64,000 bases of DNA, taken from positions 1 through 64,000 of IMG/VR virus record IMGVR_UViG_3300015261_000002; one strand, given 5' to 3'. The notes beneath the pieces are model-generated. The model ran no database searches. It was not told the origin of the DNA and saw only the letters and a program-made list of their open reading frames with translations. Positions within the stretch are counted from its first letter, which is position 1. The number at the start of each line of letters is the position of its first letter. Positions 702-54,918 of this stretch are shown here, in pieces. The position numbers and the translations under genes are program-made.

Positions 702-1268
702 ATGCATTACTTTAACGTGGATGGTCAGAACGAGCTGACGGTAGCCGCTGCCCTGCACCAGATCAAAGACAAGCTTACCCTCGAAGGCAAGACTGTTGCT
801 ATCTGTTCGGACGTTGGTGTGGGATCCGACGCTCTGATGCAAGACCGCGATCTCTGGATGGCCATCACCCACCCCGACAAGAGCAACGAAGAAAAGATCG
901 TCGCCCTTCTTGAGGCACGTTCAAAGTTCTACAAAGAAACCCTACTCCCCGCCCTCAGTCAATACGAAATTGTGTTGGTAAAGGGCGGGTTGATTCATGA
1001 CATGCGTTGGATGGATTACCGCTCGGACTCTTTCCAAACTGTCTTGAAAGAAAACCTGGAGATGTTACAATCCCTGGGTGGTGTCGCTTATCCAGCGGGA
1101 GTAATCCTTGTGAAAGGAGTGGATGAGATCGACTTGACTGAAGGTTACACCGAGCTATTCGAAACACGGGCTCAACGTATGGGCGACGCCATGTCTCGTT
1201 TCAAGTACGTACAGTACGAGTTTGGTAACGGGGGTCGCTCTGATGTGAGCATGCTTCTCAACTCTTAA
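702..1268 (+). CDS. Degenerate thymidylate-kinase-fold protein lacking the P-loop
   Basis: RBS AAGGAG. Aligns by eye to the Tmk at 18350-19150 (ALLEARSKFYKETLLPAL vs ALLFNAARAENIKDVIRPAL), but GxxGxGKT and DR motifs are absent. Confidence 0.6.
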   Translation: MHYFNVDGQNELTVAAALHQIKDKLTLEGKTVAICSDVGVGSDALMQDRDLWMAITHPDKSNEEKIVALLEARSKFYKETLLPALSQYEIVLVKGGLIHDMRWMDYRSDSFQTVLKENLEMLQSLGGVAYPAGVILVKGVDEIDLTEGYTELFETRAQRMGDAMSRFKYVQYEFGNGGRSDVSMLLNS

Positions 1269-1284
1269 CACACGGAGACCAGCC

Positions 1285-1716
1285 ATGGTTCTTCAACACT
1301 TCGTAGGAACGAAAATCGTTAAGTCAAAACCAATGACAAGATTGGTGTACTGCGATTACAGAGGCTGGGAACTCCCAGCCGATGAAGATGGCTCTGATGA
1401 AGGCTATTTGGTCGAATACCTGGACGGCGGGAAACCTAACCATCCGGACCACGAAGGTTATATCTCCTGGGCGCCCAAGGAACAGCATGAAAATGCTTAC
1501 CTGTGTATGGGCAACCTGGGTACGTATACCCCGGCTCAACAAAAGTTGTTTGCACAAAAAGCTCAGCTGGAATACCAAATCAAATCACTTCGCCAAGAGA
1601 TCAAGGAAGTCGACGAGGTTCTCGTGACGACCTGGGAAGTGCAGCTGATGGAAACGCAGTTGGCTTACATGGAAGCACAATTAAACGTGCTGACGGAACG
1701 GACGGAGTGGTTCTGA
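1285..1716 (+). CDS. Two-domain phage protein: GTK..PM..GYLVEY..GYxSWxPK domain plus crAss001_48-like helical C-terminus
   Basis: RBS GGAG. Motif recognised from phage proteins often fused to DUF2829. Confidence 0.6.
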   Translation: MVLQHFVGTKIVKSKPMTRLVYCDYRGWELPADEDGSDEGYLVEYLDGGKPNHPDHEGYISWAPKEQHENAYLCMGNLGTYTPAQQKLFAQKAQLEYQIKSLRQEIKEVDEVLVTTWEVQLMETQLAYMEAQLNVLTERTEWF

Positions 1717-1723
1717 TTTTATG

Positions 1724-1777
1724 TAACTCCTCCCCTAACTCCTCCCCCTAGTCTTCACGGGCTAGGGCGGGAGTTAA
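1724..1777 (+). terminator. Imperfect stem-loop with duplicated left arm (TAACTCCTCCCC twice)
   Basis: Inverted repeat TAACTCC...GGAGTTA downstream of the 143-aa gene. Confidence 0.5.
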
Positions 1778-1818
1778 ATGTCCCCTATTCTGATACACCT
1801 ACTAAACACGAGACTACT

Positions 1819-2502: not shown

Positions 2503-2543
2503 CAGCCATAACCCTGGAGCCTCCTTGCGGGGGCTCCAGGGTT
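2502..2543. terminator. Long stem-loop at a convergent junction, preceded by GCAGCCATA
   Basis: AACCCTGGAGCCTCC-TTGC-GGGGGCTCCAGGGTT, 15 bp with one G.T pair. Confidence 0.75.
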
Positions 2544-2550
2544 TAGGTGT

Positions 2551-5500
2551 TTACGCGCGTTTACGTTCTCGCAACATACGTTTAGCCCTTTCGAGTTTGG
2601 CGTCCTCGATAAGACTGTCCACGGTGAGGAGTTTCGCTGTTTCTGGAGGAAGCAGTTTGCTGAGCTTGTTGATCTCAGCTTCCAGACGCATCGCCAGGAT
2701 GTTGTCGTTGGTGTTCAACAGCTCATCCGTCAACTTCTGCACACGTTTCTTGATGTTGTCCATGAACGAGATAATGCTTGGATCAACTTCAGGAGCGCTC
2801 TTCTGCTTACCGGCGTCAAGGAGGTTACGCGTCTCCGACAACTGAATCCCGGTAGGAATCCCGTACATCGGTTTGTTTTGTCCCAACTTGATAAACCAGT
2901 ACGTCAGCAACCAGGCGATAACCAAGTCATCGTGCTGTTTACTGTCGTGGTCGATACGGTCTCCTTTCGTCTTGAGGTTGATCAACTCATCAGCCAGTCG
3001 ATCGTAGTTCAGCCCATACCCCGTTACCCCCACAGCTTCCTGAATTAAACCGTACAGGACTTCACGGGATTTAGCCGTGGTGTTAAATCCAAAGAACTGT
3101 TTGTACTTCAGGTAGAAGCTCTTACTGCGGTGAGCGAACTTGGTGTGCTGAACAGCCTCGTACTCCTTCGAATGGTTGACCGGGTCCTGGAAGATCTGGT
3201 TGTAGATCTTCGTGAACGGATCCATCCCTTTTGCCGGCAACATCACGAGGAGGTTATCGATCATGTGGTGAGCGTAGTTGCGTTCAATCACCAGCAGACT
3301 GTTTTCAAAGGTGGCCAGCATGTCCACAATGATCCCGGTTACATCATCCAGGAAAGCCAACTGATAACGTCCCACCCCAATCACCTTACCGGTTCGCATA
3401 CTGCGGATAATCAGCGTACAGGCGTCCTTGTTGATAGCCGATGAGGTATCCACCCCAATGAGGAAGAAGTCGTTATGGCTCTTCTTCGCCATCTCCAGCA
3501 GTTCTTGCTGCGTGACAAAGAAGTCTACAAACAGACCACTGTCACGATACTCCTTACTCCACACCTTATCCCGCTTCACGTTGTTGATCGCTTCACGGGT
3601 GATGTCGTCGAACACACGGTTCTCACCGTCTTCAACCCACATCAACAGCAAGTCGATCTTAGCCTTAGCCAAACTGAGGTTCAGGCTGTCAATCGTTTCA
3701 CGGACCCAGGCTTTGTCCTTGCCGAGTTGCAGGTAGTTATACACCAAGGCCACAGACGGTGACGTGGTCTTCTTCGGAGACGCTTTCAGCAATCGCATCT
3801 TCAGATGGCTTTCGCTGTAGGAGTCAAAGAACTTCTCACGCCACTCGGTCGACGTCATCAGCTTCTCAAACATGAACTCACCGCTTGGGTGAAGGGTCGT
3901 GTTTGGTGTCGTGATGTAACTGATCCCGTAAGGAATACCGCTGTCACGACAAATCTCCATCTCTGTCAGAGCAGAAGGAGAGCATCCGTTGATGATCGCC
4001 TCGATCCAGTTAATGTAACCTGGCTCGTCGTAGTTCGTGGTGCCTACCGTGAGACCCCGTCCAAGGTCACCTGCGGCGTCTTCACCCATCTGGGGTACCG
4101 AGATGGTCAGGGTGTTAACGTGCTCCTCCCCAAACGCTTTATACGTCAGGTAGTTACCCGCGTCCTTGTCTTTCCAGGTTGGGTTAACAAGGTACTTCGG
4201 CAAACAGGTTCGGATCTTTTTGATCGCGTCAATGAACTGAGCCCGGTTATCCGACTTCAGTGTCACAAGGTGAGACTTGTAGCCGCGCCCCATGATGTAC
4301 GTCAGCCAGAAAGCAATCACCTGTACCGATACCGTGTTGTGGGTGACCAGGAAGTCGTCAGTGACGTAGAGGTGTTCCTCGTTGTCGACTTCAATGCAGG
4401 TGCACGGTGCTTCACCGTAGTACTCGATCCGATCTACAAACAAACGGTTGTCGAATACAAACTCATCTTCAACGGTCTTGTACTTAAACAAAGCCATCGA
4501 AGCAGGAAGCGTAACCGTGAACTTACTGCCTTCCTTCAAAGCAGTGCCACCCAGTCCACGAGCGAGATACTGTACGTGACCGCCTACAAGCCTGCTGGAG
4601 GTCTTGTAGATGACACCCTCATCGCCGACTACTCCTTGGTCCAGAAACGCCTGTAACAGCAACAGGCGATCTTCCCAGGCCCCTTCCAGGTAGTCTACAG
4701 GCACCCCAAGCTCAGGATCGATAGAGATCTTCACATTCTCATCGGTCGAATGAATCTCACGACGATTACCCTTACAGACGAGTTCCAACCCTTCAGGCAG
4801 GTTCTCAACCAAGAAAGCATCGCAAGCATCCGACACCTTTTTGATCAACAGGTAACCACCAATCTGCTGAGCCCCGATCAAGGTCCCCATGACATACGGG
4901 TTGATCTTGAAGGTCTTTGCTTCTCCCTTCTCGGTCTCAATCAGTGGGAACTCAAGTTTAACCCCATCCTTGAGTTTCGTGATCATCTCGGCAGTCGTGT
5001 AGTCATCCCAGATGGGTTCGTCGTTAACCGTACGACCGTGGTCTGCCAGAGTCCACAGGTGCTCAGGCCCTGCGCTGACATAACGACCATCACTGGCATA
5101 AACACGGTACAGCCGTTTGATACCTTGAGCGTGGATACCGATAACCGTGGACTTCTTGCCGTAGCGATCGATAACCTCATCACCGGCTTGCAGATCCCCA
5201 ATCCGTCTCCAGGTCCCATCAGCCATGCGAACCTTGTCATTGTCATCCTGGTACTTGCCCTGTTGACGAGGCATGATCATGTACTGGGTGATGTGGTTCA
5301 GGTAGTTCCAGATAAAACTGATGTTCCCCCGATTCGCAAGGAACTGTCGGTCTGCCCGCAACTTACACACCTCACGGAGGAAGTACCAGAAGTTGGTCTC
5401 GCTCTCGTGCATGATCATGACTTTCTGTTCGTTTGTCAGATCGTCAGCGTAAGGGTCTACCCCGATAAGGGCCGGGTTGTTCAGTTGCAGCAGGAAGTTA

Positions 5501-5808
5501 AAGTTCTTAATCCCCTGTTGCCGAAAGATCTCAGCGGTCCGGATGAAACTGGTGTTACGGGTGGTGGTGTCAGGAATTGCACGATAACGAGCAAAGTCCT
5601 TTAGGAATCGAACGGTCTTGATCTTTGACAAACTGTCTTCATTGAAGTGAGCCATGATCAGCTCATCTTCGGTACGCTTCTCCCAGTCGACCCGGTTCTT
5701 ACGGTCGTCAATCAATTCACGTGGAAGGTTTTGTGCCCCAAGGTAATTCATGAGGTCTTTGGCAAACTTGAGCTGGCCCTCGTCTGCCGTATTCTCGGCT
5801 GTAGTCAT
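2551..5808 (-). CDS. terL: Terminase large subunit containing an intein
   Basis: After intein removal: Walker A PRQQGK|T, Walker B YDE, nuclease motif LIGVDTS. Position divergent from the sheath/tube genes matches phiKZ-like phages. ATG at 5808 preferred over GTG at 5826. Confidence 0.92.
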   Translation of the reverse strand: MTTAENTADEGQLKFAKDLMNYLGAQNLPRELIDDRKNRVDWEKRTEDELIMAHFNEDSLSKIKTVRFLKDFARYRAIPDTTTRNTSFIRTAEIFRQQGIKNFNFLLQLNNPALIGVDPYADDLTNEQKVMIMHESETNFWYFLREVCKLRADRQFLANRGNISFIWNYLNHITQYMIMPRQQGKYQDDNDKVRMADGTWRRIGDLQAGDEVIDRYGKKSTVIGIHAQGIKRLYRVYASDGRYVSAGPEHLWTLADHGRTVNDEPIWDDYTTAEMITKLKDGVKLEFPLIETEKGEAKTFKINPYVMGTLIGAQQIGGYLLIKKVSDACDAFLVENLPEGLELVCKGNRREIHSTDENVKISIDPELGVPVDYLEGAWEDRLLLLQAFLDQGVVGDEGVIYKTSSRLVGGHVQYLARGLGGTALKEGSKFTVTLPASMALFKYKTVEDEFVFDNRLFVDRIEYYGEAPCTCIEVDNEEHLYVTDDFLVTHNTVSVQVIAFWLTYIMGRGYKSHLVTLKSDNRAQFIDAIKKIRTCLPKYLVNPTWKDKDAGNYLTYKAFGEEHVNTLTISVPQMGEDAAGDLGRGLTVGTTNYDEPGYINWIEAIINGCSPSALTEMEICRDSGIPYGISYITTPNTTLHPSGEFMFEKLMTSTEWREKFFDSYSESHLKMRLLKASPKKTTSPSVALVYNYLQLGKDKAWVRETIDSLNLSLAKAKIDLLLMWVEDGENRVFDDITREAINNVKRDKVWSKEYRDSGLFVDFFVTQQELLEMAKKSHNDFFLIGVDTSSAINKDACTLIIRSMRTGKVIGVGRYQLAFLDDVTGIIVDMLATFENSLLVIERNYAHHMIDNLLVMLPAKGMDPFTKIYNQIFQDPVNHSKEYEAVQHTKFAHRSKSFYLKYKQFFGFNTTAKSREVLYGLIQEAVGVTGYGLNYDRLADELINLKTKGDRIDHDSKQHDDLVIAWLLTYWFIKLGQNKPMYGIPTGIQLSETRNLLDAGKQKSAPEVDPSIISFMDNIKKRVQKLTDELLNTNDNILAMRLEAEINKLSKLLPPETAKLLTVDSLIEDAKLERAKRMLRERKRA
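4336..5253 (-). mobile_element. 306-aa class-3-type intein (Tyr1) with degenerate LAGLIDADG remnants
   Basis: YQDDNDKVRMADG...IGDL...EHLW...CTCIEVD...VTHN|T, inserted between K and T of Walker A. Confidence 0.9.
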
Positions 5809-5848
5809 GATAGGTTCCCATTGCACATCAAAAAATAAAAGATACTCG

Positions 5849-5887
5849 CAAAAATAAAGCAGGCCCAGGGTGTTACCCCCAGGCCTG
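5849..5887 (-). terminator. Putative intrinsic terminator
   Basis: Imperfect GC hairpin followed on the minus strand by TTTATTTTT. Confidence 0.5.
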
Positions 5888-5897: not shown

Positions 5898-6128
5898 TTA
5901 CTTCAGGATCGACGCAGGGACACCAACTTCGGGATCCACTGGTTCTGCTTCTTCTTTCAGACGCTCATGAGTCGTCACAGCGCGGTTGTCGTAGATCAGC
6001 ACTTCACGGCTTTCACCGTTTTGCAGTGTGAACTGTTCGAACAGGCTACCGTCGGTGATGTTGAACACCTGGACCAGCACTTCTTTCGTATCCGCACAAT
6101 GAGCGGCAACCTTAACTTGCGATGTCAT
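5898..6128 (-). CDS. Small hypothetical protein (76 aa)
   Basis: RBS GGAG; fills the gap in a minus-strand operon. Confidence 0.75.
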   Translation of the reverse strand: MTSQVKVAAHCADTKEVLVQVFNITDGSLFEQFTLQNGESREVLIYDNRAVTTHERLKEEAEPVDPEVGVPASILK

Positions 6129-6160
6129 ACATTTCTCCGATAGGGATTACACGTATAACA

Positions 6161-7882
6161 TTAAGGCGCCAACTCCACGGTTACACCGGTCATGCCCAGT
6201 TGCAACTCAACGCCAGAGACGTCTTTGTTGATCCAGTTGACGTACCACGTCTTGCCCTTTTGCATGGCAATGGTGATCGCATTGGTCTGGTTCCAGGCTG
6301 TAATCGGGAACCGCCATTTACGGCCATCTTCATGCATCAGGTCGAAGTGAGTCGCCACCGGCGCCTTGTCTTCGTTGAAGATGTCGTAGCTTGGGTAGAT
6401 CGACCAGTACATCACGTTCAGCCACTCGTCGATGTGATCCTGACCGTTAGCAATGGTAAACGTGGTGTTAGCCCCGTTGTTCTTCGCCACGACATTCAAC
6501 GCCGTGTAGGCTGGCTTGCCGTAGGAGTAGTTGACACTCCAACGCTTGCCTGGACCGTTTACATCTTTCAACAACACAATCTCGGTGTGCTGAATGAACG
6601 GCACACTTTCATACGTCTGAGCGACGTCTTTGAGGTTGATGTTGAAGATGAGTGCCTGCGACAGACCATACGACGACGGTTTGTAGACCGGGCTCTTGTC
6701 GTTATAGGTAACCACCGCAGTAACGTCGGTAAACGTCTTGCGATCGAGGTCGTACAGGAAGTGCTGCAAACGGTAACCGTTGAGCGACGCATCCCATTGA
6801 GGGTAGGTGAAGATCCGTGGGCTGTAAGCACCCTTGGCTGCACCGGCCTCGAAGGTGTAGGTGTGTCGGGCAAAGTTCGGGTTACCCGGCTGAGCGACGT
6901 CATGCTGCTCGTTCGGGGCCAGTTTCTTGATCAACACCACGTCAGCACTTTGACCTGGGAACTTCGGACGGTATTCGTTAACGCCATGCAGCGTGTACTC
7001 ACCACCGTTGACCGGACCAGGTTCAGAAGTCGAACCGTCAGAGTAATGCGTAACCGCTCGCAGTTCGACAGACGACAGTTGAACGTTGACCGGAATGATC
7101 AGACGATCGCGATCGCTCACATGAGTGAACCATGGCGACAGCAGTTCCACACCGGTGACGTACTTGACGCCGATGTTGTGGTCTTTCATGTACGCCGAAT
7201 GCTGAACCATCAAAGGCTGAGCAGGCGGGATGAACGTTTCGCCATCGAAGAACACCAGCCAAGCACGCGTGCCATCCGGCAGAGCGAGTTCGTTCTTCGT
7301 TACGCTGAACGCACCGGTCGTCATGATCGACTTGTTCGTGTACTCGTTGATCAAGGCCAACTTAACCGGAACGGTCTTGCTGATCATGTTCATCGATTGG
7401 TCGTACTGAGCCGAGATGATGTTACCCTCGACAGCGGCATTACCCAGGTATACGAATGCATGGGTAGCACCCGGACGCATGATCGTCGCATCCACACGCG
7501 CCACGTTAGGGCGTACGGAGTAGTCGATCGACAGCAGAGCTTCACCGGCCATTGGACCACCACGGAGACCGTAGATGTAGTCCTGGTCGGTGGTGTTACC
7601 TTCGTCAACGTTGGTCAGGCGCCAAGGCACCAGGGTCGACTTCAGGGTAGCCTGCCAGTCCACTTTGGCAACGAGGTAAATCATGCCGTTAGGAGGATCA
7701 AACACCAGCTCCCCTTCCTGGGGCACAACGTACTTGGTCAGATCACTTGGTGGATGGACGTCTGGATCATAAATGTTCCAGAGGTAGTGGAAGTTTTTGC
7801 GTTCACCGGTGTTGAGGGGATGGATGTTCGTCCCCGCAACCGCAGCAATCGCGTTAGACAACGGCGACTGGTCAAACAGCAT
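6161..7882 (-). CDS. Virion structural protein (phiKZ gp26-like by synteny)
   Basis: 573-aa beta-rich ORF next to the terminase in the conserved block. Confidence 0.7.
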   Translation of the reverse strand: MLFDQSPLSNAIAAVAGTNIHPLNTGERKNFHYLWNIYDPDVHPPSDLTKYVVPQEGELVFDPPNGMIYLVAKVDWQATLKSTLVPWRLTNVDEGNTTDQDYIYGLRGGPMAGEALLSIDYSVRPNVARVDATIMRPGATHAFVYLGNAAVEGNIISAQYDQSMNMISKTVPVKLALINEYTNKSIMTTGAFSVTKNELALPDGTRAWLVFFDGETFIPPAQPLMVQHSAYMKDHNIGVKYVTGVELLSPWFTHVSDRDRLIIPVNVQLSSVELRAVTHYSDGSTSEPGPVNGGEYTLHGVNEYRPKFPGQSADVVLIKKLAPNEQHDVAQPGNPNFARHTYTFEAGAAKGAYSPRIFTYPQWDASLNGYRLQHFLYDLDRKTFTDVTAVVTYNDKSPVYKPSSYGLSQALIFNINLKDVAQTYESVPFIQHTEIVLLKDVNGPGKRWSVNYSYGKPAYTALNVVAKNNGANTTFTIANGQDHIDEWLNVMYWSIYPSYDIFNEDKAPVATHFDLMHEDGRKWRFPITAWNQTNAITIAMQKGKTWYVNWINKDVSGVELQLGMTGVTVELAP

Positions 7883-10544
7883 TGTTGTTCACCTCGAAGT
7901 AACCTTCAATCACGCAGACCGATTCCAGGTAGAGATCGTTAACCTGTTTGAAGAAGATGAGTTGTTTATCCGACACGGTGAGTTTACCGTAGTTAGCAAA
8001 CGGGGTAATAGCGAAATAACGACGGTCATACTTCAGCGTTACCGGGTCATACTTCAGCCACCAGACGTAAGACTTAAGAGCATCCTTGATGTCTTGGTTG
8101 CTGTAATAGGTATCACCGTCCGATTGGTTGGGCAAGCGGATCAAACCGTTCAGCACACCGTTTACCACCACGTTCATGAACGGGCTGTACAAACGGTATT
8201 TGTCTTGCAGGTTTGGAATCACCGCGCTACCAATGCCGGCCGGACGTTGGGGATCCCCATTTTCCCAGTGAATCTCTTCGTCATTCGTTTGAGGTTTCGG
8301 CAGGTACTTGGTCAGGTAGTCACTCACACGCTGATCGGTTTCACGGCTGCGTTGACGATAAGGCAACTCGTCATAGTCTTCCACGAAACGAATCGGACAC
8401 CAGTGGTGCTTAACCATGTACGGCTTACCGTTCAGAGGGTTACCGATGTCATCAGGAACGTCTCGCTCTGCCCGCGGTACTTCATCGGTCAGGTAAAGGG
8501 CTCCATTAATAACCGTACGAGTAACTCGATCACCGCGCAGATTATAACGATCAACGCGACCGATAACCCCACCATCCACAAATCCCAGTTCGGTGTCAGC
8601 GTTCGGCAGCACCACAGTTTTATCGAGACCCATAGCACGGACAGTAATCGTCTGAGGCCCGTCAACGAGGAATTCCTTGTTGTTGATGTAGCAGTACTGG
8701 CCTTCATAGATCCAATCCACTTTGTCAACCAACGGATGGCCGTTCAGCCAAATGTCGATCTGTGCCCAGGTCAGGCCGGTCAGGTGACCACCATCTTCGT
8801 AAATGTCCGTGATCGCAAACGCAAGGCTGTGATCCATGTGCTCGAGTTGGAACTGGTAACCGAGGATCTTCTTGTTGCTGATGAGGATCCCACGCTTGTT
8901 GACCCGGTCCAGCCCTTTCCAGATCAGCAGCCCATTCTCGATGCGATACATCGCTGGGTCACCTGTCACGTTCGTCCAGGGTCCAACGAGTTCGTTGAGG
9001 TTGATATTCCAACCTGACGTGTAAACCTGATAGTCCCAATCTTTCGAGACTTCAACGTCTTGGTTAGTAACCACCATGTCGAGGGTACGACCGGTAGAGC
9101 CCATCGTGAACTCAACCATGGCACAGGCTGGATTGTTCGGCGAGTAGTAAAGAACACCACTCATGTTCCGCCATTCCAACAGCTGACCGTTCTCGTCATG
9201 CTCCCAGGCTGTACAAGCCTCCTGGTAGGTCGCAGGGATGTCGACACCCCGGCTGCCTAGCAAGTAGGTCGCTCGAACCGGCGTCTCGCTCAGAACGCGT
9301 GTGGCGGCGTTGTAGCCTACCGACATGATGGCGTCTTCACGCTTCACATTCTTCCACTGCTTACGCAACAGCTTCATGACCGGACCTTGTTCCAATTGCT
9401 TAGCTGTCCATTCCGGCATGTTTGCCCGTGCGTCCACCATGGCTCGCATGATGTCGATGTCAGGCATCCGGTACAGGTAACGGATACGCTGATGTTCATG
9501 AGGCCACTGGAAGGTCCAGGCGGTCTTACGAATCAACACAAGGATACGGCAGTCGGCGATGTTCGACAGATCCGGGTGGTATTCGGTTGCTGCGTGCAAG
9601 ACATCGTCCGCAATGGCCACGTCCACATGGGTCAGTTGACGAATGGTCTTCTCATCATTGCGATGCAGATAAACCCCACGACGCTTACCACCCATCCAGT
9701 AGTAGTCGTTGTCGTCAAAGTAGCGAATGGTGAAATCGCCTTTGATCTTTGGTGGGTGCAGGATAACCTTGTCCTTCAGATCCATCTCGGAGTAGAAGGC
9801 CTGTAGCTGGTTGTACGCGTACAGTTCCGAGCGCAGCACCGTTGGGTCATGCCAGAACTCGATCACGTCACCCGGTGCAATCGGGTTGATCACAGAAGGC
9901 GGACCGTTGATGATCGTCCCGTTATGGAACAAGCCTGTGTAACCAGGCCGTGCCTTGACCGTTGCATAACGACCGAGGAACGTGCTGTATTCCGACGGGT
10001 TCTCGTACACACAGGTTTCAAGAATAAACGGGTTACCGGTTTCATTGGTAACGAGTCGGCTCTTGTCCACGAGGACCGAAGGCGTGTAGCAACGGAAGTG
10101 CATGTCGTCGCCATTCTTCACCGGAGTCTTGCTGAGCTTTTGAATCGCGATCAGAACAAGACCGTCGTAAGTCACCATGATCCAGCAGTGGCTACGGCTC
10201 TGCATGTAACCTTTCGTCGAATACACGTCGGTCAGCAAACCACGGGACTTGCACAACATCCCCAGGTTCACCCAACGGTCCAACGGATTGCGACGCAGCG
10301 TGTTGTTCTTGAAGTTCCAGTAACCTGGATGGAGACCACCTACCGAGAACACGTGGAAGAACGTATTCTTTTTCGGCAAGGACCGCCACTTGTTCATGTA
10401 GCTGAAGTTGGAACTGTAACCGTATTCCTCGGTAATGCGATTAAGCTTTACCTGGTACTGCTGGTTCTCTTCCGGATTAGACCAGAGATGATCGTCCGTG
10501 TATCGAACCAGCGGCGTATTGTCTTCCGGTCCACGAATACCCAT
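7872..10544 (-). CDS. Virion structural protein (phiKZ gp27-like by synteny)
   Basis: 890-aa ORF overlapping the next gene; size and position match the conserved block. Confidence 0.7.
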   Translation of the reverse strand: MGIRGPEDNTPLVRYTDDHLWSNPEENQQYQVKLNRITEEYGYSSNFSYMNKWRSLPKKNTFFHVFSVGGLHPGYWNFKNNTLRRNPLDRWVNLGMLCKSRGLLTDVYSTKGYMQSRSHCWIMVTYDGLVLIAIQKLSKTPVKNGDDMHFRCYTPSVLVDKSRLVTNETGNPFILETCVYENPSEYSTFLGRYATVKARPGYTGLFHNGTIINGPPSVINPIAPGDVIEFWHDPTVLRSELYAYNQLQAFYSEMDLKDKVILHPPKIKGDFTIRYFDDNDYYWMGGKRRGVYLHRNDEKTIRQLTHVDVAIADDVLHAATEYHPDLSNIADCRILVLIRKTAWTFQWPHEHQRIRYLYRMPDIDIMRAMVDARANMPEWTAKQLEQGPVMKLLRKQWKNVKREDAIMSVGYNAATRVLSETPVRATYLLGSRGVDIPATYQEACTAWEHDENGQLLEWRNMSGVLYYSPNNPACAMVEFTMGSTGRTLDMVVTNQDVEVSKDWDYQVYTSGWNINLNELVGPWTNVTGDPAMYRIENGLLIWKGLDRVNKRGILISNKKILGYQFQLEHMDHSLAFAITDIYEDGGHLTGLTWAQIDIWLNGHPLVDKVDWIYEGQYCYINNKEFLVDGPQTITVRAMGLDKTVVLPNADTELGFVDGGVIGRVDRYNLRGDRVTRTVINGALYLTDEVPRAERDVPDDIGNPLNGKPYMVKHHWCPIRFVEDYDELPYRQRSRETDQRVSDYLTKYLPKPQTNDEEIHWENGDPQRPAGIGSAVIPNLQDKYRLYSPFMNVVVNGVLNGLIRLPNQSDGDTYYSNQDIKDALKSYVWWLKYDPVTLKYDRRYFAITPFANYGKLTVSDKQLIFFKQVNDLYLESVCVIEGYFEVNNNAV

Positions 10545-11457: not shown

Positions 11458-11546
11458 TGCCAGTGGTATAACACACTGTACGGCCCAGAAATGGCTAGCA
11501 TACGATTGTTTTAGGACCCACAAACAGGACATCAACGAGGTTCTCC

Positions 11547-15123: not shown

Positions 15124-15858
15124 TTACCTTCGAGCAAAAATGCGGTTATAGTTATTCTTCACAAGTCCTCCGATGTACTCAGGGTCGTCGGCTAGAGCTT
15201 GGAAGTTTCTTAACTGCTCCTGCTTGTTGTTAAGGACCATAATTGGCAGCGTTTTCCACGCCGTTCCACGTCGGCCAAAGCGTTCGGCAAAGCTACCCGC
15301 CAGCGCCAAGCACCATTCATCAGGGTCCATGGGGGCGAGATTCGGCGTAGAATTGTTTCTGACGAAATCAATGACCATCTTTGCGTGGTTCGGATAGAAG
15401 ACGTCTGTTAACAACCGCACCTCATTCGCAATGACTGAGATAGCGGTATCGACTGAGGGACGCAAGTTCATGGTAGTGGCTCGGCGACAACACTTGTAGA
15501 TGCTTTGAATTTCGTCGTCGGTAAAGAAGCCATCCGAGTGTTCATTCAAAAAGACAACCGCAAAAGCTGCTGATGCATCATTAGGGGTAGAACCATCATA
15601 GGTCCTGCCGGTCTCCATGAGCATCGTTACAGCGTACATGATGTGAAGAGCACCCGTAGGGAGGGAATGGAGATCAGACAGCTCCTTGGTAGCACACAGA
15701 GCGTTGTAGAGCCACTCATGATCGTAACCTTTAGGGTTTTTCTTCATGTGATTAAAAATCTTGAAGATAAAGTCCAAAGGTAGATGATTGCCAACGACGG
15801 TTAAGATCCCTTGAAACGTCTGAAAGTTTTTACGGTCCGCTGAACGGAAGCGGTTCAT
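15124..15858 (-). CDS. Degenerate HD-domain-like protein
   Basis: Spacing matches the HD fold (GYDHEW...AVTMLMETG...DASAAFA...FTDDEIQSI), but ME replaces HD. Confidence 0.5.
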   Translation of the reverse strand: MNRFRSADRKNFQTFQGILTVVGNHLPLDFIFKIFNHMKKNPKGYDHEWLYNALCATKELSDLHSLPTGALHIMYAVTMLMETGRTYDGSTPNDASAAFAVVFLNEHSDGFFTDDEIQSIYKCCRRATTMNLRPSVDTAISVIANEVRLLTDVFYPNHAKMVIDFVRNNSTPNLAPMDPDEWCLALAGSFAERFGRRGTAWKTLPIMVLNNKQEQLRNFQALADDPEYIGGLVKNNYNRIFARR

Positions 15859-18349: not shown

Positions 18350-19150
18350 TTATGCGTCTTCAGCGGGAGTTGGATACGGCGCTGTTGCTGTCGCAAATTC
18401 ACGACTGGAGACACGTTGAGTAGGAGTGTCCGATACAACAAGATTGCCCAAAGTCTTTTGGTGCCGTTCCAAAAGACTGTCCACAGTTGGAACTACTTCG
18501 GGAACCGGACGTTGCTTCATCTTGTCGATGACCTTCATCAACTCAGGCATGATCTGTGCATACACCTGGTCTGGGTTTACCTCGGCATTTACCAGCACGT
18601 AACGCCCGTCGTGAATCCGGAACTTGGTTAGGTTCACATAGTTCCAACGAGCCACATTCAACTTTTCCATCGCCATGGAATCAAATTGATCGCGTGCCAT
18701 TTCCTCTGGGGAGATGCGTTTCTGAAAGATAGCAGGGTCACCATCCAGCAGGAACGTAATGTCCGGAAAGAAGTCACCATGCACGGCGTGGTGAAGATCC
18801 AGGAGTTTCTTCAGCCCCGCATCATGCTGGAAAGCAAACGTCGAATCGCAGAAACGATCACACAGTACAACTTTACCTTCTTGCAATGCTGGTCTGATAA
18901 CGTCTTTGATGTTCTCTGCCCGCGCGGCATTGAACAGTAACGCTACTGTTGTCGGATCCAGTTTACCTGGATTGCCCGGAATACCTTCACGACACAGCTT
19001 ACGCAGGTACTCAGCCGCAAAGGTACCGCCTGGCTCACGAGTACGCACGTACGGCACGTTGGCTTGTTGCAGTTGCGCTTCCATACGGTCCAGCACTGTG
19101 GTCTTACCAGAGCCCCCTAGCCCTTCTACAACGATTAACTGTCCTTTCAT
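18350..19150 (-). CDS. tmk: Thymidylate (dTMP) kinase
   Basis: VEGLGGSGKTT P-loop, TREPGG, LCDRF and PDITFLLD motifs. Confidence 0.95.
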   Translation of the reverse strand: MKGQLIVVEGLGGSGKTTVLDRMEAQLQQANVPYVRTREPGGTFAAEYLRKLCREGIPGNPGKLDPTTVALLFNAARAENIKDVIRPALQEGKVVLCDRFCDSTFAFQHDAGLKKLLDLHHAVHGDFFPDITFLLDGDPAIFQKRISPEEMARDQFDSMAMEKLNVARWNYVNLTKFRIHDGRYVLVNAEVNPDQVYAQIMPELMKVIDKMKQRPVPEVVPTVDSLLERHQKTLGNLVVSDTPTQRVSSREFATATAPYPTPAEDA

Positions 19151-19530
19151 TGAGTTGATGCCTTTTCAAGAGAAATAATGAGAGCCTCTACAGAATCCAT
19201 GGCATCTTTCAATAACGGTGGTTGAGCCACCCAAACAGAACCGTCTGGATAAAAGTCAACCACCTTACGAATGGGGCGGGATGGTCTGTAACGATCTCCC
19301 ACCACTTTGTCAGCTTCTTTCTGTACAGACAGGGCTCCGTTACCCCAGCTGTCATGCAGCGTGATAAGGAAACCGTTTAACTTTTGAGGACCCAATACCT
19401 TAAGCCTAGATTGAGCCTTCAGTCTAGCATACAGCCCTTTATAATCGTAAGCCGTCTTAGTCCCCACAGGTCGCTCCTTAAGCCACCGCTTCTTCCTGTT
19501 TAAAGGCGGGAAGTTTTCCCACCATTTCAA
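19147..19530 (-). CDS. Hypothetical protein (127 aa)
   Basis: ATGA-coupled to tmk; overlaps the upstream gene by 53 nt, so the start is uncertain. Confidence 0.55.
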   Translation of the reverse strand: MKWWENFPPLNRKKRWLKERPVGTKTAYDYKGLYARLKAQSRLKVLGPQKLNGFLITLHDSWGNGALSVQKEADKVVGDRYRPSRPIRKVVDFYPDGSVWVAQPPLLKDAMDSVEALIISLEKASTQ

Positions 19531-20422
19531 TATGAGCTTTCACAAAACGCTTGAAGTCATATACCGCGTTATGGTATTCGTGTTTATCAAACGTAATGTC
19601 GTACTTCCAGCTAAACAACTTACTCATTTCACTTACCAGATCCATCGCATCGTCAGGCAGCCCGACGTCAGACGGCAACCCATATCCACACATAATGCGA
19701 ATATGAGCTGGAATGTCAGTCAGAGCCACTTCCCAATGCTCGCGCATTTCCATATCCAGCTGCCGGCCAATTTCCTTTAGCTTTGTTGGATAGGCGTTAT
19801 AGGAGGCTTTATTTTCACGGCGGTGTATCGAGGCCTTGCCGTTAACCAAGGTCAGGTCTTTTAGCTTCTGCGGCAATATCGCGTAAATTTCTTTCTTGGT
19901 CAAATCCCACAGCGGCATGCGGAAAGGTGTCTCGAGGTTGTCCGCATTACCCAGTCGTCCGATAAGTGCGGGCATTGTGGTGATCAAATCGTGATAGTCC
20001 TGTTCGGAGTGATCCCACTCTTCCAACGAACTCTCAGCAGCATCCGCACGATTCCAACCAATCCAGGTACCAGGGCACTCGTCATAATTCATACGACGGA
20101 TATCGGCCATACCCAAAACAGTGGCCAATTGTTGGACAATGGAATTGCAGACCTGGTTCTCACCATCACTGCGTTTCATCCGTGCCGGGAATGGCGAAGA
20201 GAAACGGTAGGATACGTCCGCAATACGTCCACCTCCCGGAAATTCCATTTTCTTTACTTCCTGCACGATCAGCCACATTGCATACGCTTCATACATCATG
20301 GTCTCGGGAACCCCGGACACATTGATCATGTGCAAGTTAACTGTAAACCCTCGACGGAGGGCGAGTACCAACAAAGCGGTAGAGTCGATACCTGAACTGA
20401 AAGCAATGTTGACGTGTGGCAT
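19478..20422 (-). CDS. PP-loop (QueC-like) adenine-nucleotide alpha-hydrolase
   Basis: N-terminal IAFSSGIDST PP-loop and MPLWDLTKKEI (QueC PLxxxxKxEI-like). No C-terminal Cys cluster. Confidence 0.65.
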   Translation of the reverse strand: MPHVNIAFSSGIDSTALLVLALRRGFTVNLHMINVSGVPETMMYEAYAMWLIVQEVKKMEFPGGGRIADVSYRFSSPFPARMKRSDGENQVCNSIVQQLATVLGMADIRRMNYDECPGTWIGWNRADAAESSLEEWDHSEQDYHDLITTMPALIGRLGNADNLETPFRMPLWDLTKKEIYAILPQKLKDLTLVNGKASIHRRENKASYNAYPTKLKEIGRQLDMEMREHWEVALTDIPAHIRIMCGYGLPSDVGLPDDAMDLVSEMSKLFSWKYDITFDKHEYHNAVYDFKRFVKAHIEMVGKLPAFKQEEAVA

Positions 20423-49797: not shown

Positions 49798-49805
49798 GGT
49801 GCACC

Positions 49806-50486: not shown

Positions 50487-50489
50487 GGT

Positions 50490-50867: not shown

Positions 50868-50924
50868 TTTCCCCTAAATAAGAATAGGGACTCGATGAAT
50901 TGAGTCCCCCTATACATTGCCGCA

Positions 50925-52415
50925 TTACTTAGCGACTTTCTTTTCCAGCCAGTACGGCTTACGTTCGCCAATGGCGATTTTCAACAGCTCCATAGTTGAG
51001 ACGGTGTGCTTCTTGATCTCTGGGTTCGTGTGCCAATAGTACACGGTGTTTTCCAGAATGTCGTCCCAGCTATACCCCTGCTCTTTGATTTTTTGGTAGA
51101 GTTCTTGGGGTGTGATGCGGTAACGCTTTGGTGTATCGAGCCAGAAGGCTTGCATGTGCAGCATCTGGTAGCAGATCGTCAGTGCACGTTCCAGCTTAGG
51201 ATCGGACAGTGTCTTCTCCCAGATGGTAGTACGGCCGAGTTTCAGCTCAGGGTACAGAACACAGGCGTGGCTGATCGCCGAGCCTTCCAGACCAAACATG
51301 CCATTCGTTTTCATAGCATGATACATGGTCAGACCTTCCTGGATCCCTAGACTTTGGGAACCAATAAAGAAGAAACTGCCACCACTGCTGCCACTCTTGT
51401 TACGATAAGCAGTGAATGGGTAAAACAGTAGATCAGGGTTTTCTTTAGCATCTGCATCGAGGACAATGTCTTTACCGAACGGGTTAGGGTACAGCCATTC
51501 CTGGCCGCTTTTCAATGCGGAACCCTTGATGATCTCCCAGCCTACTTGTGGGACACGCATCATCGACTTCGGCCCTTTAAGCTTCTTGCCAGGACGAATG
51601 AAGACGGATTCCTTTTCTTGTGGGCGACCGGTCATGTTGATCGTGTCAACAACCTGGGCCGTCCAGAACTGCACGCAGCCGATTTCACCGCCCAGTACGT
51701 CGGCGTCTTCGTAAACGATACGCTTCATGTTACCGATGGCCATGTCACGGGTACGCTTCTCGCCGCCTTCGTCGACGTCGCCGTCTTGGAAGTGAGCAGA
51801 GACCTTGTGGAAGTGCATCTCGGAGATCGAGTCCACAAAGGTAATGATCGGAGTGATCAGCTTGATTGGCAAACCATCGTTACCCAGGTACGGGGTTTCG
51901 ATGTAGATATCTTTCTTCGCCTTGATATCTTCTTTAACTTTGGCGTTGAGGTCCTTGAAGAAGTTGTGGACCCAGGTACCGTCAACACCGGCGATCTCAG
52001 CCTTTGGATCATGACGACCAAATGGATTGGCCTTGTGATCGTTACGGTTGAAATAGAAGAAACGTTTGTTAAGAACGTGTTCGTTGAAATAACCGGGAAT
52101 GCCACACTCACGGTCATACATGTCGGCCATACGCTTCACCGACAACGTGGCCTCGATATCCATGACGAAAGCAATCGACGTTGGAATGCGAAACAACAGG
52201 CGCACGATTTGCAGTGCGGTCTCACCAGTCTTCTGCGTGTTGTTACCGCCGGTCACTGCGTTGTTACGGCACGCGCCACCGTTGAGGTAGGTGATACCGT
52301 TTGGACCGATTACGTGTTCGCCGTTAACCATGTCGTTGATCGGTGACACGTTGTACGCGGGAATCAATGCGTCAGATGATTTAATGTCTTCAACAAAAGA
52401 AAACGGACTCGCCAT
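50925..52415 (-). CDS. UvsX/RecA-like recombinase (phiKZ gp152-like)
   Basis: Divergent Walker A GGNNTQKT, MDIEAT, FVDSIS and RNKSG motifs; synteny. Confidence 0.75.
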   Translation of the reverse strand: MASPFSFVEDIKSSDALIPAYNVSPINDMVNGEHVIGPNGITYLNGGACRNNAVTGGNNTQKTGETALQIVRLLFRIPTSIAFVMDIEATLSVKRMADMYDRECGIPGYFNEHVLNKRFFYFNRNDHKANPFGRHDPKAEIAGVDGTWVHNFFKDLNAKVKEDIKAKKDIYIETPYLGNDGLPIKLITPIITFVDSISEMHFHKVSAHFQDGDVDEGGEKRTRDMAIGNMKRIVYEDADVLGGEIGCVQFWTAQVVDTINMTGRPQEKESVFIRPGKKLKGPKSMMRVPQVGWEIIKGSALKSGQEWLYPNPFGKDIVLDADAKENPDLLFYPFTAYRNKSGSSGGSFFFIGSQSLGIQEGLTMYHAMKTNGMFGLEGSAISHACVLYPELKLGRTTIWEKTLSDPKLERALTICYQMLHMQAFWLDTPKRYRITPQELYQKIKEQGYSWDDILENTVYYWHTNPEIKKHTVSTMELLKIAIGERKPYWLEKKVAK

Positions 52416-52431
52416 TGCAGTCTTCCTGATA

Positions 52432-52439
52432 ATGTTATG
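52432..52439 (+). promoter_or_regulatory. Candidate late promoter ATGTTATG
   Basis: Same octamer as upstream of the sheath gene, about 80 nt before an ATG. Confidence 0.4.
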
Positions 52440-52519
52440 AATTCAATCCAGGGGCCATCCGCCCAATCATTATTGGGCAAACTGCCCTCCCCCAAACTAT
52501 AGTGATACAGAGGTCAGTA

Positions 52520-53341
52520 ATGGAACAATCCACTGAAACCCCGAACTACCTGGCACTGGTACAGAAACCAGAACCCTTTACTGTTCAAGGCTTTGAAGCC
52601 CTGGGCCTGGGTGAAAACTTTAAGCTGTTCTTTAAAGAGTTCACATCTTCGATCGACAACCGCATGGCAACGCTGAGCAAGTCTATCCACAAGGTAGATG
52701 CCTCCGCTGCCCTTCTCAACATCGAGCGCAATAAAGTGCTCTATGTGAAGAACACCGGTGTTGAAATCCTGACCCCCGAAGGTTTCTCCGCGGGCATGGG
52801 TAACATGATGGCACATACCAAAGCGGTAACCGCCGGTATCTACATCGTGTGCAGTTTGAAAACCGAAGCATCGAGACTATATGATTGGCTGAAACAAGTC
52901 ATTCGTACCGGTCGCATCGATCGCAGCTTCGGCTGGACCATTCGTGACTTCGACACGGCCCTGAGCAAGACCGAAAACTTCGTACGTCAACTGCCTACCG
53001 GTAGCCGTAAACTGAAGTTCAACCTCGGTCAGGTCTACTTCAACTTCGACGAGTTCTTTGACTGTGTCAATACCTTCAACGACACGGTACAGACCCTCGG
53101 CGCTCGTGATGTGGAAATGCTCGCCAAGGAACTGTCGAACGTCTACGAACTCGGTGAATTGCTCGTACACAAGATCAAGACGAGCGAACTGGTGATCAAT
53201 GAACAAGGCATCGACGACATCGAAACCGTCGTAAACAAGTTCGTTGCCCTCACCAACCTGTCGGGTGCCGTCCTGGTGCTCCTGAATGACCTCACAGCGG
53301 TCTTCAACGAACAGGTCAAGACCATCGCAGCCCTTCGTTAA
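52520..53341 (+). CDS. Virion head protein (phiKZ gp153-like by synteny)
   Basis: RBS GAGG; N-terminal G-F-E candidate protease site. Confidence 0.65.
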   Translation: MEQSTETPNYLALVQKPEPFTVQGFEALGLGENFKLFFKEFTSSIDNRMATLSKSIHKVDASAALLNIERNKVLYVKNTGVEILTPEGFSAGMGNMMAHTKAVTAGIYIVCSLKTEASRLYDWLKQVIRTGRIDRSFGWTIRDFDTALSKTENFVRQLPTGSRKLKFNLGQVYFNFDEFFDCVNTFNDTVQTLGARDVEMLAKELSNVYELGELLVHKIKTSELVINEQGIDDIETVVNKFVALTNLSGAVLVLLNDLTAVFNEQVKTIAALR

Positions 53342-53344
53342 CAA

Positions 53345-53392
53345 GCAGCCATAAACCTAACTACAGGAGCCCACACAGGCTCCTGTAGTTAG
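53345..53392. terminator. 15-bp stem-loop at a convergent junction, preceded by GCAGCCATA
   Basis: CTAACTACAGGAGCC-CACACA-GGCTCCTGTAGTTAG. Confidence 0.78.
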
Positions 53393-53400
53393 TAAGCGTT

Positions 53401-54918
53401 TTATGAATTTCTTCCCAGCTCAGCTTCTGACAGTACACGAAGATTTGCTCCTGCACTGGTGTGCACGTAGATAAAGTCGTTTGTCTTTACCAGCGTACAG
53501 AAACGCATGCCTTGTGCGTTCCGGGAATCAACAGCTACCCACACCTCTACATCAGGATCTTCTACCGAGTTAAACGCGTTACGCTCTGGAATGTCGTAAC
53601 CCACAGACAACGTGATCGGAACTGGCTTAACCGCATTGCGATGTTCGACCGGAACCTTAAAGGTTGTCTTGAGCTGGTTGAAGTCAGGATGCAACTTCAA
53701 CTTAGTGACGCCCTTGCCATTGACTTCCTTGACGTAGATCAGATCCGTGATGTTGTAGAACTTGGTATCACCAAAGACGTTCTTCTCATCCTTCTTGAGG
53801 AAAGACTCGAGTACTATGTCCATGGTGTCCAAGAACTCACGGATACGGTACGACATCAGGACCGGCGAGATCAGTTCGATCAGGACCGGTTTGCCATTGC
53901 CTTTAGTAACAGGCGAGACAAGGTTGTTGTCTTCCTTAACAGCAGGAATACTGTCCAGCATGCGCGCAACGTCTTTGCTCGTGAGGTTGTTGAGCGTTCC
54001 TGCCGACAGGTACCCATCAGGGTTCGCAATCTTCTTGGCAGTAAACTCATACATCTTGTCCAACAACTTGATTGGAGTCAAGGTGTACAACTTCGAATAC
54101 GTCACGTCCGGGGTGATTTTCCCGTAATAGTTTTTGTCGGGTTCCACTTTACCGAAACTGTAGACTCGGTACCCGTTAAAGAGATCGTAAAACTTTTCGT
54201 ACTGACCGGTTTCGAAGTACCAACGACTGGCGCTGACTATCTTGTTAAAATCCGTCTCTGGGTTCTCGTATTCCTTACGAGACATTACCGAAATATCCGG
54301 CTTCTGCTCATGACCCCATACGCTGGATATCTCAGCGATTTCCATTTGCTTGTGAGCGAGACGGTTACCCAACCCACCCTCAGCAGATCCTGGAAGATCG
54401 AAAAACAACTTACGTTCCTTGTTGTTCCTCAGAATCTCCAGTTGTTCGCACAGTTCGATACCGGTTTTGATTTCTTCCGGAGTCAGGACATGCTTACCCA
54501 CCTTCACGTCCTGGCCGGATACCACTTTCCAAGCAGGTTCCTGCATGCGGCTAATGAGTTCGAGTTCCTTGTGAGGCGTTACAATCCATAGGTTCTTTTG
54601 CCCACGCTCGTTAGCGACTTTCAGAACTTCCAAGAATCCTTTCATCAAGCTGTCAATCAAACTGCTTGCATTAGGCACAATCAGATTGACGATGTCCTGG
54701 ACTACTACAACGGTGTTCGGTTTTTGCTTGTTGCCAGTGTAGTACCCTGTCGAGGTCGCTACATCTTTGGCCAACTTTTTCTTGCCCTCTTCTTTAACAT
54801 CATAGGTATAACCATGGCCACCCATGTAGTAATGATGTTTCCGACGACCTTCCTTGGGCTCTAAGGCATTTGCAATGAGATAAACGACCATGTTTATCGT
54901 TGGAATATTTTCGTCCAT
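53401..54918 (-). CDS. RNase H-like protein (phiKZ gp155-like) with apparently degenerate catalytic residues
   Basis: Synteny and size; GGHGYTY and LGNRLAH (GNxxAD-like); first strand VVYLIAN lacks the Asp. Confidence 0.6.
   Translation of the reverse strand: MDENIPTINMVVYLIANALEPKEGRRKHHYYMGGHGYTYDVKEEGKKKLAKDVATSTGYYTGNKQKPNTVVVVQDIVNLIVPNASSLIDSLMKGFLEVLKVANERGQKNLWIVTPHKELELISRMQEPAWKVVSGQDVKVGKHVLTPEEIKTGIELCEQLEILRNNKERKLFFDLPGSAEGGLGNRLAHKQMEIAEISSVWGHEQKPDISVMSRKEYENPETDFNKIVSASRWYFETGQYEKFYDLFNGYRVYSFGKVEPDKNYYGKITPDVTYSKLYTLTPIKLLDKMYEFTAKKIANPDGYLSAGTLNNLTSKDVARMLDSIPAVKEDNNLVSPVTKGNGKPVLIELISPVLMSYRIREFLDTMDIVLESFLKKDEKNVFGDTKFYNITDLIYVKEVNGKGVTKLKLHPDFNQLKTTFKVPVEHRNAVKPVPITLSVGYDIPERNAFNSVEDPDVEVWVAVDSRNAQGMRFCTLVKTNDFIYVHTSAGANLRVLSEAELGRNS

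What the first reader, a model, noticed from the sequence alone, without database searches (positions are those of the whole stretch)
702..54918. Recurring intact but de-catalysed nucleotide-enzyme folds: a possible decoy repertoire
Four full-length ORFs appear to keep a nucleotide or nucleic-acid enzyme scaffold while losing key residues: Tmk-like (702), HD-like (15124), QueC-like without Zn cysteines (19478) and RNase H-like (53401). None has a frameshift or premature stop, which argues against simple decay. Inference: exaptation as sponges, decoys or structural parts, as is known for large eukaryotic DNA viruses. The four need not form one system.
Basis: inference. Interest (0 to 1): 0.6.

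Follow-up and report, generated by a model that had tools for sequence, protein, structure and literature searches.

The report
Three dead enzymes in jumbo phage
In this jumbo phage three of the four flagged genes are enzyme folds that have lost their catalytic residues but are kept by selection; they are unrelated genes, not a decoy set, and the clearest one is a known DNA-polymerase helper whose RNase H activity now sits in a separate gene.

Summary
The window is the first 64 kb of a complete 224.7-kb EL-like (chimallivirus-type) jumbo phage. All four ORFs are intact and under purifying selection (pN/pS 0.10-0.20, like neighbouring genes).

- **702-1268:** a Tmk derivative. The P-loop Gly/Lys, the DR motif and the LID are gone. 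An intact Tmk lies at 18350-19150.
- **15124-15858:** an HD-domain derivative (HD changed to ET, two further His lost).
- **53401-54918:** the ortholog of Rhc (phiKZ gp155/Nlp2, Goslar gp190), the RNase H-clamp subunit of the chimallivirus DNA polymerase. Its RNase HI fold is confirmed (Z about 12), but D10, D70, H124 and D134 are replaced.
- **19478-20422:** this one is not de-catalysed. It keeps the PP-loop (SSGIDS) and is a divergent QueC-superfamily ATPase, not a QueC.

The dead Rhc domain marks one large clade. All 9 such genomes tested carry a separate canonical RNase HI. All 6 genomes with an intact Rhc domain have none. This is one evolutionary transition, best read as the catalytic activity moving to a separate gene.

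Nothing supports a decoy or sponge repertoire. The four genes are scattered, have different distributions, and one has a published structural role.

The parts
702..1268 (+). P0001, 188 aa: pseudo-thymidylate kinase. It is a Tmk-fold derivative without the P-loop Gly/Lys, the DR motif or the LID. The NMP-site Arg R73 is kept, and a new invariant motif ENLEMLQS-GG-AYPAG lies at 117-133.
   Evidence: dN/dS 0.11-0.16. The synteny DUF7484 / 460-476 aa gene / this gene holds in relatives down to 33% identity.
15124..15858 (-). P0002, 244 aa: pseudo-HD-domain protein (H to W49, HD to E82-T83, H to A127, D152 kept). It is the ortholog of EL gp003, next to the tail tube and sheath genes.
   Evidence: dN/dS 0.09-0.14. 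No PF01966 match anywhere in the genome.
19478..20422 (-). P0003, 314 aa: divergent PP-loop ATP pyrophosphatase of the QueC superfamily. The PP-loop S9-S-G-I-D-S14 is retained, there is no Zn-Cys motif, and a C-terminal extension covers about 205-314. It is the ortholog of EL gp200.
   Evidence: pN/pS 0.18 with dS saturated. No PF06508 or TGT match in the genome.
18350..19150 (-). Canonical thymidylate kinase with an intact P-loop (GLGGSGKTT) and DRF motif. It lies directly downstream of P0003, as EL gp201 follows gp200.
   Evidence: PF02223 at 7.8e-33 and 1.6e-31. Sequence. EL synteny.
53401..54918 (-). P0004, 505 aa: the Rhc (RNase H-clamp) ortholog. Residues about 6-206 have the RNase HI fold with a dead active site (I15, D89, P115, A179, H189). 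Residues about 223-496 form a sliding-clamp-like domain.
   Evidence: phrog_3265 at 1e-113. hhalign to phiKZ gp155: 98.4%, E 6.5e-15, full length. AF2 model pLDDT 87. Fold searches. Catalytic columns. dN/dS 0.07-0.11.
50925..52415 (-). UvsX/RecA-like recombinase. Its neighbourhood has the same gene order as phiKZ gp152-gp155, which supports orthology of P0004 with gp155.
   Evidence: phrog_97 at 2.1e-30. phiKZ gene order.

Best explanation
These are four independent genes of an EL-like nucleus-forming-type jumbo phage. Three are true pseudoenzymes kept for non-catalytic roles. One is probably an active enzyme.

1. P0004 is the phage's Rhc. Its clamp-like C-terminal domain binds DNA and the split B-family DNA polymerase and boosts replication; this is shown for phiKZ and Goslar and inferred here by orthology. 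In the ancestor of a large clade (EL, RisingSun, Miami, pTD1, the Aeromonas phages, OBP, and the Serratia and Pantoea phages) the RNase H active site was lost. The fold stayed under selection. These genomes carry a separate canonical RNase HI (here at genome 114270-114683), which most likely supplies the hybrid-cleaving activity in trans (inferred).
2. P0001 is a Tmk derivative that cannot bind ATP in the P-loop or transfer phosphate. It keeps the NMP-side arginine and has gained a new invariant motif. It most likely acts by binding a nucleotide or a protein partner (inferred, weak).
3. P0002 is an HD-fold protein without its metal site. Its role is unknown and probably structural or binding.
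4. P0003 is a divergent PP-loop ATPase with an unknown substrate. Its conserved position next to the real Tmk hints at nucleotide metabolism (inferred).
For: Identity of the phage: best protein matches are EL and RisingSun at about 52-55%, and the genome is a 224,747-bp record with terminal repeats.

Rhc:
- Full-length profile match to phiKZ gp155.
- RNase HI fold at Z 11-12.7.
- Clamp matches over residues 223-496: Z 5.4-6.7, Foldseek probability 0.85-0.96.
- Published function in PMC12571901, PMC13648698 and PMC13648687.
- Catalytic columns across 120 homologs: D at the D10 column in 8, at D102 in 7, H at H161 in 0, D at D171 in 5.
- Named phages split cleanly into intact and dead types.
- PF00075 sits in a separate 163-185 aa ORF in 9 of 9 dead-type genomes, and only inside Rhc in 6 of 6 intact-type genomes.
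- The window genome's own stand-alone RNase HI has D, E, D, H and D intact.
- The dead domain itself has pN/pS 0.10-0.13.

Tmk-like. HD-like. PP-loop. Selection.
Against: - No experiment bears on this phage.
- The dead-Rhc genomes form one side of a single well-supported branch (96/97). The 9-versus-6 pattern is therefore one co-inherited transition, not repeated independent evidence.
- An acidic residue at the E48-equivalent (D89 here) is kept in 83 of 120 homologs. Some non-canonical activity cannot be excluded.
- The P0001 model is poor (pLDDT 43). Its Tmk assignment rests on several weak but concordant lines.
- RisingSun gp238 passes the Pfam HD cut-off only narrowly (22.5 against 22 bits).
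Confidence: 0.7

Rival explanations
1. Decoy or sponge repertoire. The dead folds bind nucleotides, signalling molecules or host defence proteins and so blunt host immunity.
For: P0001 keeps the NMP-site arginine R73 while losing the ATP side. All four genes are under purifying selection. P0001 is confined to a narrow group of uncultured relatives, as accessory counter-defence genes often are.
Against: P0004 has a documented replication role in its orthologs (PMC13648698, PMC13648687). P0003 keeps its catalytic loop. No ligand, partner or defence-related neighbour was found for P0001 or P0002. The four genes share no locus, strand or distribution.
Confidence: 0.1
2. The catalytic residues have only moved. 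The proteins are still enzymes with non-canonical active sites.
For: P0004 and most of its homologs keep an acidic residue near the E48 position. P0002 keeps D152 and has E82 in place of the HD histidine. P0001 has a new invariant polar motif at 117-133.
Against: In Rhc, three of the four carboxylates and the histidine are replaced, mostly by hydrophobic residues, Pro, Ala or His, and the replacing residues vary between relatives. In P0001 the whole LID is deleted and the P-loop Gly and Lys are gone across the family. A separate intact Tmk and a separate intact RNase HI exist in the genome.
Confidence: 0.1
3. The pattern is only an impression created by fast divergence of phage proteins, and the fold assignments are wrong.
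For: Pfam finds nothing significant in any of the four. The P0001 model is of low confidence. The PDB profile hits for P0001 and P0002 are not significant.
Against: P0004 has a high-confidence model with strong RNase HI matches. P0001 and P0002 each have two or more independent lines pointing to the same family. Bridging homologs with intact motifs exist for all three.
Confidence: 0.05

Closest known systems
Rhc (RNase H-clamp) = phiKZ gp155/Nlp2 = Goslar gp190, a chimallivirus DNA-polymerase accessory subunit
   Same: Full-length homology and the same two-domain build, an RNase HI fold plus a PCNA/9-1-1-like clamp domain. The neighbourhood also matches, with a recombinase nearby.
   Different: phiKZ and Goslar Rhc have an intact DEDD-H site and cleave hybrids in vitro. 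Here, and in the whole EL/OBP/pTD1/Aeromonas-type clade, D10, D70, H124 and D134 are replaced, and a separate RNase HI gene is present. None of the three papers I searched by keyword mentions this.
Thymidylate kinase (PF02223)
   Same: Length and order of secondary-structure elements. The region around the NMP-site Arg and the following helix-strand aligns with real Tmk.
   Different: P-loop GxxxxGKT is replaced by V-D-G-Q-N-E-L-T. REPGG and DR(F/Y) are replaced, the latter by G95-G96. The LID of about 45 residues is deleted. No Pfam match.
HD-domain phosphohydrolases (PF01966), e.g. RisingSun gp238
   Same: Homologous over 95% of its length. The last Asp of the H..HD..D pattern is kept.
   Different: Both His residues and the HD dyad are replaced, in this clade and in EL gp003.
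QueC family and other PP-loop ATP pyrophosphatases (QueC, Cap9/QatC, LarE, TilS)
   Same: The N-terminal PP-loop, and a P-L-W-D-x-x-K-K-E-I segment that aligns with a weak, non-significant match in Cap9. The best PDB hit is Cap9, E 9.3e-4. The Aeromonas homolog scores PF06508.
   Different: There is no C(x)8CxxCxxC zinc motif, and by eye neither the YxQxHxxE nor the VPxRN motif listed in PMC13329287 is present. The genome has no 7-deazaguanine pathway genes. A C-terminal extension of about 110 residues is unique to this family.

Membership tests
Rhc (RNase H-clamp) of chimalliviruses | Full-length homology to phiKZ gp155 / Goslar gp190 | tested here: met
   hhalign 98.4%, E 6.5e-15, 442 aligned columns. 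tblastn reaches Goslar, RAY, SPN3US and PCH45 through the C-terminal domain.
Rhc (RNase H-clamp) of chimalliviruses | N-terminal RNase HI fold | tested here: met
   Z 11-12.7, 133-162 aligned residues, rmsd about 3 A, model residues 6-206.
Rhc (RNase H-clamp) of chimalliviruses | C-terminal sliding-clamp-derived domain | tested here: inconclusive
   The only non-RNase-H matches over residues 223-496 are clamps: 3ggr_B Z 6.7, 7st9_H 6.3, ASFV clamp 5.8; Foldseek probability 0.85-0.96. Z is below 8 and the domain was not folded alone.
Rhc (RNase H-clamp) of chimalliviruses | Binding to the DNAP-N/DNAP-C polymerase core and to DNA | not tested
   Known only for phiKZ and Goslar (PMC13648687, PMC13648698).
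Catalytically active RNase HI (PF00075) | D10, E48, D70, D134 carboxylates and H124 (E. coli numbering) | tested here: not met
   The positions are I15, D89 (or none), P115, H189 and A179. No Pfam match.
Thymidylate kinase (PF02223) | P-loop GxxxxGK[ST], DR(Y/F/H) motif and LID | tested here: not met
   All three are absent across the 11-member family. No Pfam match.
Thymidylate kinase (PF02223) | Tmk/NMP-kinase fold | tested here: inconclusive
   The model has pLDDT 43. Its Foldseek top hits are Tmk at E about 1e-2, TM about 0.4. The profile reaches a real Tmk at E 9e-4. Look-alike score 0.93.
HD-domain phosphohydrolase (PF01966) | H...HD...D metal-binding residues | tested here: not met
   W49, E82-T83 and A127 replace them; only D152 is kept. 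No Pfam match.
HD-domain phosphohydrolase (PF01966) | HD fold | tested here: inconclusive
   Homology to an HD-scoring protein and HD look-alikes at 0.95. No structure was predicted.
QueC (PF06508) | SGGxDS PP-loop | tested here: met
   S-S-G-I-D-S at residues 9-14; SGGVES in EL and Miami.
QueC (PF06508) | C(x)8CxxCxxC zinc motif and a preQ0-pathway context | tested here: not met
   No such motif; there are only three scattered, non-conserved Cys. No PF06508 or TGT match in the genome.

The most novel reading that the evidence does not exclude
In a large clade of chimalliviruses the polymerase subunit Rhc is naturally nuclease-dead. Its RNase H work has been handed to a separate RNase HI that must then reach the phage nucleus. 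This would be a natural separation-of-function that could explain why catalytic-dead Rhc rescues phiKZ fully but Goslar only partly. Alongside it, the pseudo-Tmk and pseudo-HD proteins would be nucleotide-binding regulators or sponges.
Probability: 0.35. Interest if true: 0.6.

Novelty: new variant of a known kind. Interest (0 to 1): 0.45.

Why it matters
Rhc was described only recently, and its two published systems disagree on whether its nuclease activity is needed. A whole clade with a naturally dead RNase H domain and a stand-alone RNase HI gives a ready-made test. It predicts that the clamp role and the hybrid-cleaving role can be split between two proteins.

The pseudo-Tmk family appears undescribed. 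Pfam, PHROGs and the cultured-phage records give no match, and one literature search found nothing. Together with the pseudo-HD protein, it adds examples of selected pseudoenzymes in phages.

The result also warns that database labels such as "ribonuclease" or "QueC-like" on jumbo-phage genes do not show activity.

Tried and rejected
- Megablast of 8 kb against phage records found nothing.
- Pfam, NCBIfam and PHROGs gave no useful hit for P0001 or P0002.
- tblastn of P0001 against 50,697 phage records found nothing.
- PDB sequence and profile searches were not significant for P0001, P0002 and P0004.
- The AF2 model of P0001 from six close sequences was poor (pLDDT 43), so its fold search is only a weak pointer.
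- Biopython dN/dS failed for P0003 because synonymous sites are saturated. I replaced it with my own Nei-Gojobori counts and a bootstrap.
- I considered P0003 as part of a 7-deazaguanine pathway and rejected it: the genome has no QueC or TGT match.
- I considered testing a P0001-Tmk heterodimer with complex prediction. I did not run it, because I do not claim that they bind.
- I did not use the sequencing-run tools; expression in a metagenome-derived phage was unlikely to be informative.
- The IMG/VR record G002 is a 48% fragment and gave no information.
Full report
**What the window is.** The window is the first 64 kb of a single 224,747-bp virus record with direct terminal repeats, rated complete. 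No phage record matches it at the DNA level. Its proteins are closest to Pseudomonas phage EL and Erwinia phages Joad and RisingSun, at about 52-55% identity. The gene content is typical of phiKZ-like jumbo phages:
- split virion RNA polymerase beta subunits at 29414-33787 and 33792-35408;
- a 2669-aa tail protein with a lysin domain;
- a large terminase and a UvsX-like recombinase;
- tail sheath, tail tube and an S80 protease, identified from the gene calls of relatives.

**The four ORFs are real and selected.** All four are uninterrupted and have homologs of the same length in related uncultured genomes of 214-228 kb.

| ORF | dN/dS against relatives at 75-92% protein identity |
|---|---|
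| P0001 | 0.11-0.16 |
| P0002 | 0.09-0.14 |
| P0004 | 0.07-0.11 |
| P0003 | about 0.08-0.12 where dS is not saturated |
| Control genes (sheath, tube, protease, small neighbours) | 0.03-0.25 |

Bootstrap pN/pS never exceeded 0.36 in 1000 resamples for any of the four. Neutral decay is excluded.

**P0001 (702-1268), Tmk-like.**
- Pfam, PHROGs and tblastn against cultured phages find nothing.
- The word search finds five close relatives.
- A profile search of 1.84 billion representatives adds five distant members (27-42% identity) and, at E 9e-4, a bona fide thymidylate kinase. That kinase scores PF02223 at 5e-21.
- All listed language-model look-alikes that carry a family are Thymidylate_kin clusters, score 0.93.
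- The three best PDB profile hits are Tmk, though not significant.
- hhalign to the phage's own Tmk gives E 9e-4 over 69 columns.
- The low-confidence model (pLDDT 43) has the beta-alpha order of an NMP kinase, and its Foldseek list is led by Tmk entries.

Aligned with six real Tmks, the family shows four losses:
- V-D-G-Q-N-E-L-T in place of GxxxxGKT;
- no REPGG motif;
- G95-G96 in place of DR(F/Y);
- a deletion of about 45 residues that removes the LID.

The arginine of the NMP site (R73) and P83 are invariant. A new motif, ENLEMLQS-GG-AYPAG at 117-133, is almost invariant. An intact Tmk lies at 18350-19150. P0001 is therefore a second, dead copy of the fold. Its position after a DUF7484 gene and a 460-476-aa gene is kept in relatives down to 33% identity.

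**P0002 (15124-15858), HD-like.** tblastn finds EL gp003 (28% identity) and RisingSun gp238 (24% over 95% of the length), which is annotated as a phosphohydrolase. gp238 scores PF01966 HD just above the cut-off. Twenty-four of the 30 look-alike hits are clusters in which some members carry PF01966 HD, score 0.95. Two alignments show these changes in this clade, with the HD dyad also lost in EL:

| gp238 residue | P0002 residue |
|---|---|
| H42 | W49 |
| HD dyad | E82-T83 |
| later His | A127 |
| final Asp | D152 (retained) |

The genome has no other HD match. The gene sits beside the tail tube and sheath genes, as in EL.

**P0003 (19478-20422), QueC-like.** This ORF differs from the other three.
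- The N-terminus carries S-S-G-I-D-S. EL gp200 and Miami gp102 have SGGVES, and the Aeromonas homolog has SGGLDS and scores PF06508.
- The best solved relative is the QueC-family protein Cap9 (E 9.3e-4).
- A review of the family defines QueC by SGGxDS plus C(x)8CxxCxxC. It also shows that related active enzymes such as LarE and the GMP-synthase-like cluster keep the loop but lack the zinc motif (PMC13329287).
- P0003 has no zinc motif, and the genome has no QueC or TGT match.

So P0003 is not a QueC, but nothing shows that it is inactive. It is followed by the real Tmk, as EL gp200 is followed by gp201.

**P0004 (53401-54918), RNase H-like.** It matches phrog_3265 "ribonuclease" at 1e-113, has homologs in 121 jumbo-phage records and has 147 metagenomic relatives. 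A 32-sequence profile aligns with phiKZ gp155 over its full length (98.4%, E 6.5e-15). gp155 itself scores PF00075.

The AF2 model (pLDDT 87) has two parts:
- an RNase HI fold at residues 6-206 (Z 11-12.7);
- a C-terminal part whose only other structural matches are sliding clamps (Z 5.4-6.7 over 223-496; Foldseek probability 0.85-0.96).

This is the architecture published as Rhc, the RNase H-clamp subunit of the chimallivirus DNA polymerase (PMC13648698, PMC13648687). The published results on its nuclease activity are:
- In phiKZ the D102N mutant has no RNase H activity yet fully complements (PMC12571901).
- In Goslar the D119N mutant rescues replication only partly and does not rescue late transcription (PMC13648698).

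**The dead active site is clade-wide.** In this ORF the catalytic positions are I15 (D10), P115 (D70, equal to phiKZ D102), A179 (H124) and H189 (D134). Only an acidic residue near E48 (D89) remains. Across 120 homologs the counts are:

| Column | Homologs with the catalytic residue |
|---|---|
| D10 | D in 8 |
| D102 | D in 7 |
| H161 | H in 0 |
| D171 | D in 5 |

None of the residue patterns that one search listed combines the three aspartates. Among named phages the split is clean:
- Intact motifs: phiKZ, Goslar, RAY, SPN3US, PCH45, phiEaH2.
- Lost motifs: EL, RisingSun, Miami, pTD1, Aeromonas D3 and AerS_266, OBP, Survivor, Sureiya and the IMG/VR relative.

On a tree of the clamp domain the dead type forms one side of a branch with 96/97 support. 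This fits a single loss.

**Complementary RNase HI.**
- PF00075 scans of whole genomes find exactly one match in each genome.
- In the 9 dead-type genomes tested it is a separate ORF of 163-185 aa (E 1e-39 to 1e-46).
- In the 6 intact-type genomes it lies inside Rhc.
- The window genome's small enzyme has all five catalytic residues.

I read this as a hand-over of the nuclease activity to a separate gene, with the Rhc domain kept for a non-catalytic role; its own pN/pS is 0.10-0.13. Because the dead type arose once, the 9-versus-6 pattern is a single transition and cannot prove cause. Keyword searches of the text of the three Rhc papers found no mention of it.

**Verdict on the interpretation.** Three of the four observations hold and the fourth does not. 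The genes are unrelated, scattered and differently distributed. The best-understood one is a replication protein, not a decoy. For P0001 and P0002 a binding role is possible, including sponge-like nucleotide binding, but it is untested.

Noticed in passing
window 18350-19150 (-), compared with L008, L009, L007: The real Tmk is 80% identical to the allele in one relative but only 43-46% identical to those in two others. Flanking genes stay at 65-87%. This suggests replacement of the Tmk allele within a conserved neighbourhood.
   Followed up: partly
window 2551-5826 (-): The terminase large-subunit ORF is 1091 aa, but PHROG terminase profiles match only residues 18-398. Relatives have the same length. 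The long C-terminal part is unexplained.
   Followed up: no
window 19147-19530 (-): A 127-aa ORF overlaps the 3' end of P0003 and the start of the Tmk ORF. No gene is called there in relatives and Pfam finds nothing. It is probably not a gene, and the Tmk start is probably downstream of the first ATG.
   Followed up: partly
window 1-690 (+): An ORF runs off the 5' end of the record. Relatives have a 460-476-aa gene here, so the record starts inside a gene. This fits an arbitrary cut of a terminally repeated assembly.
   Followed up: no
L017 (Erwinia phage phiEaH2) 3040-4098: The phiEaH2 homolog of P0003 has lost the PP-loop (A---GMSES in alignment A5). A truly degenerate form of this family may therefore exist in SPN3US-like phages.
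   Followed up: no
window 6122-7942 (+) and 6161-7882 (-); also 11532-13640 (-) and 11547-13718 (+): Very long open frames lie on both strands over the same stretch. The plus-strand frame of the second pair is the tail sheath. The antisense frames are probably compositional.
   Followed up: no
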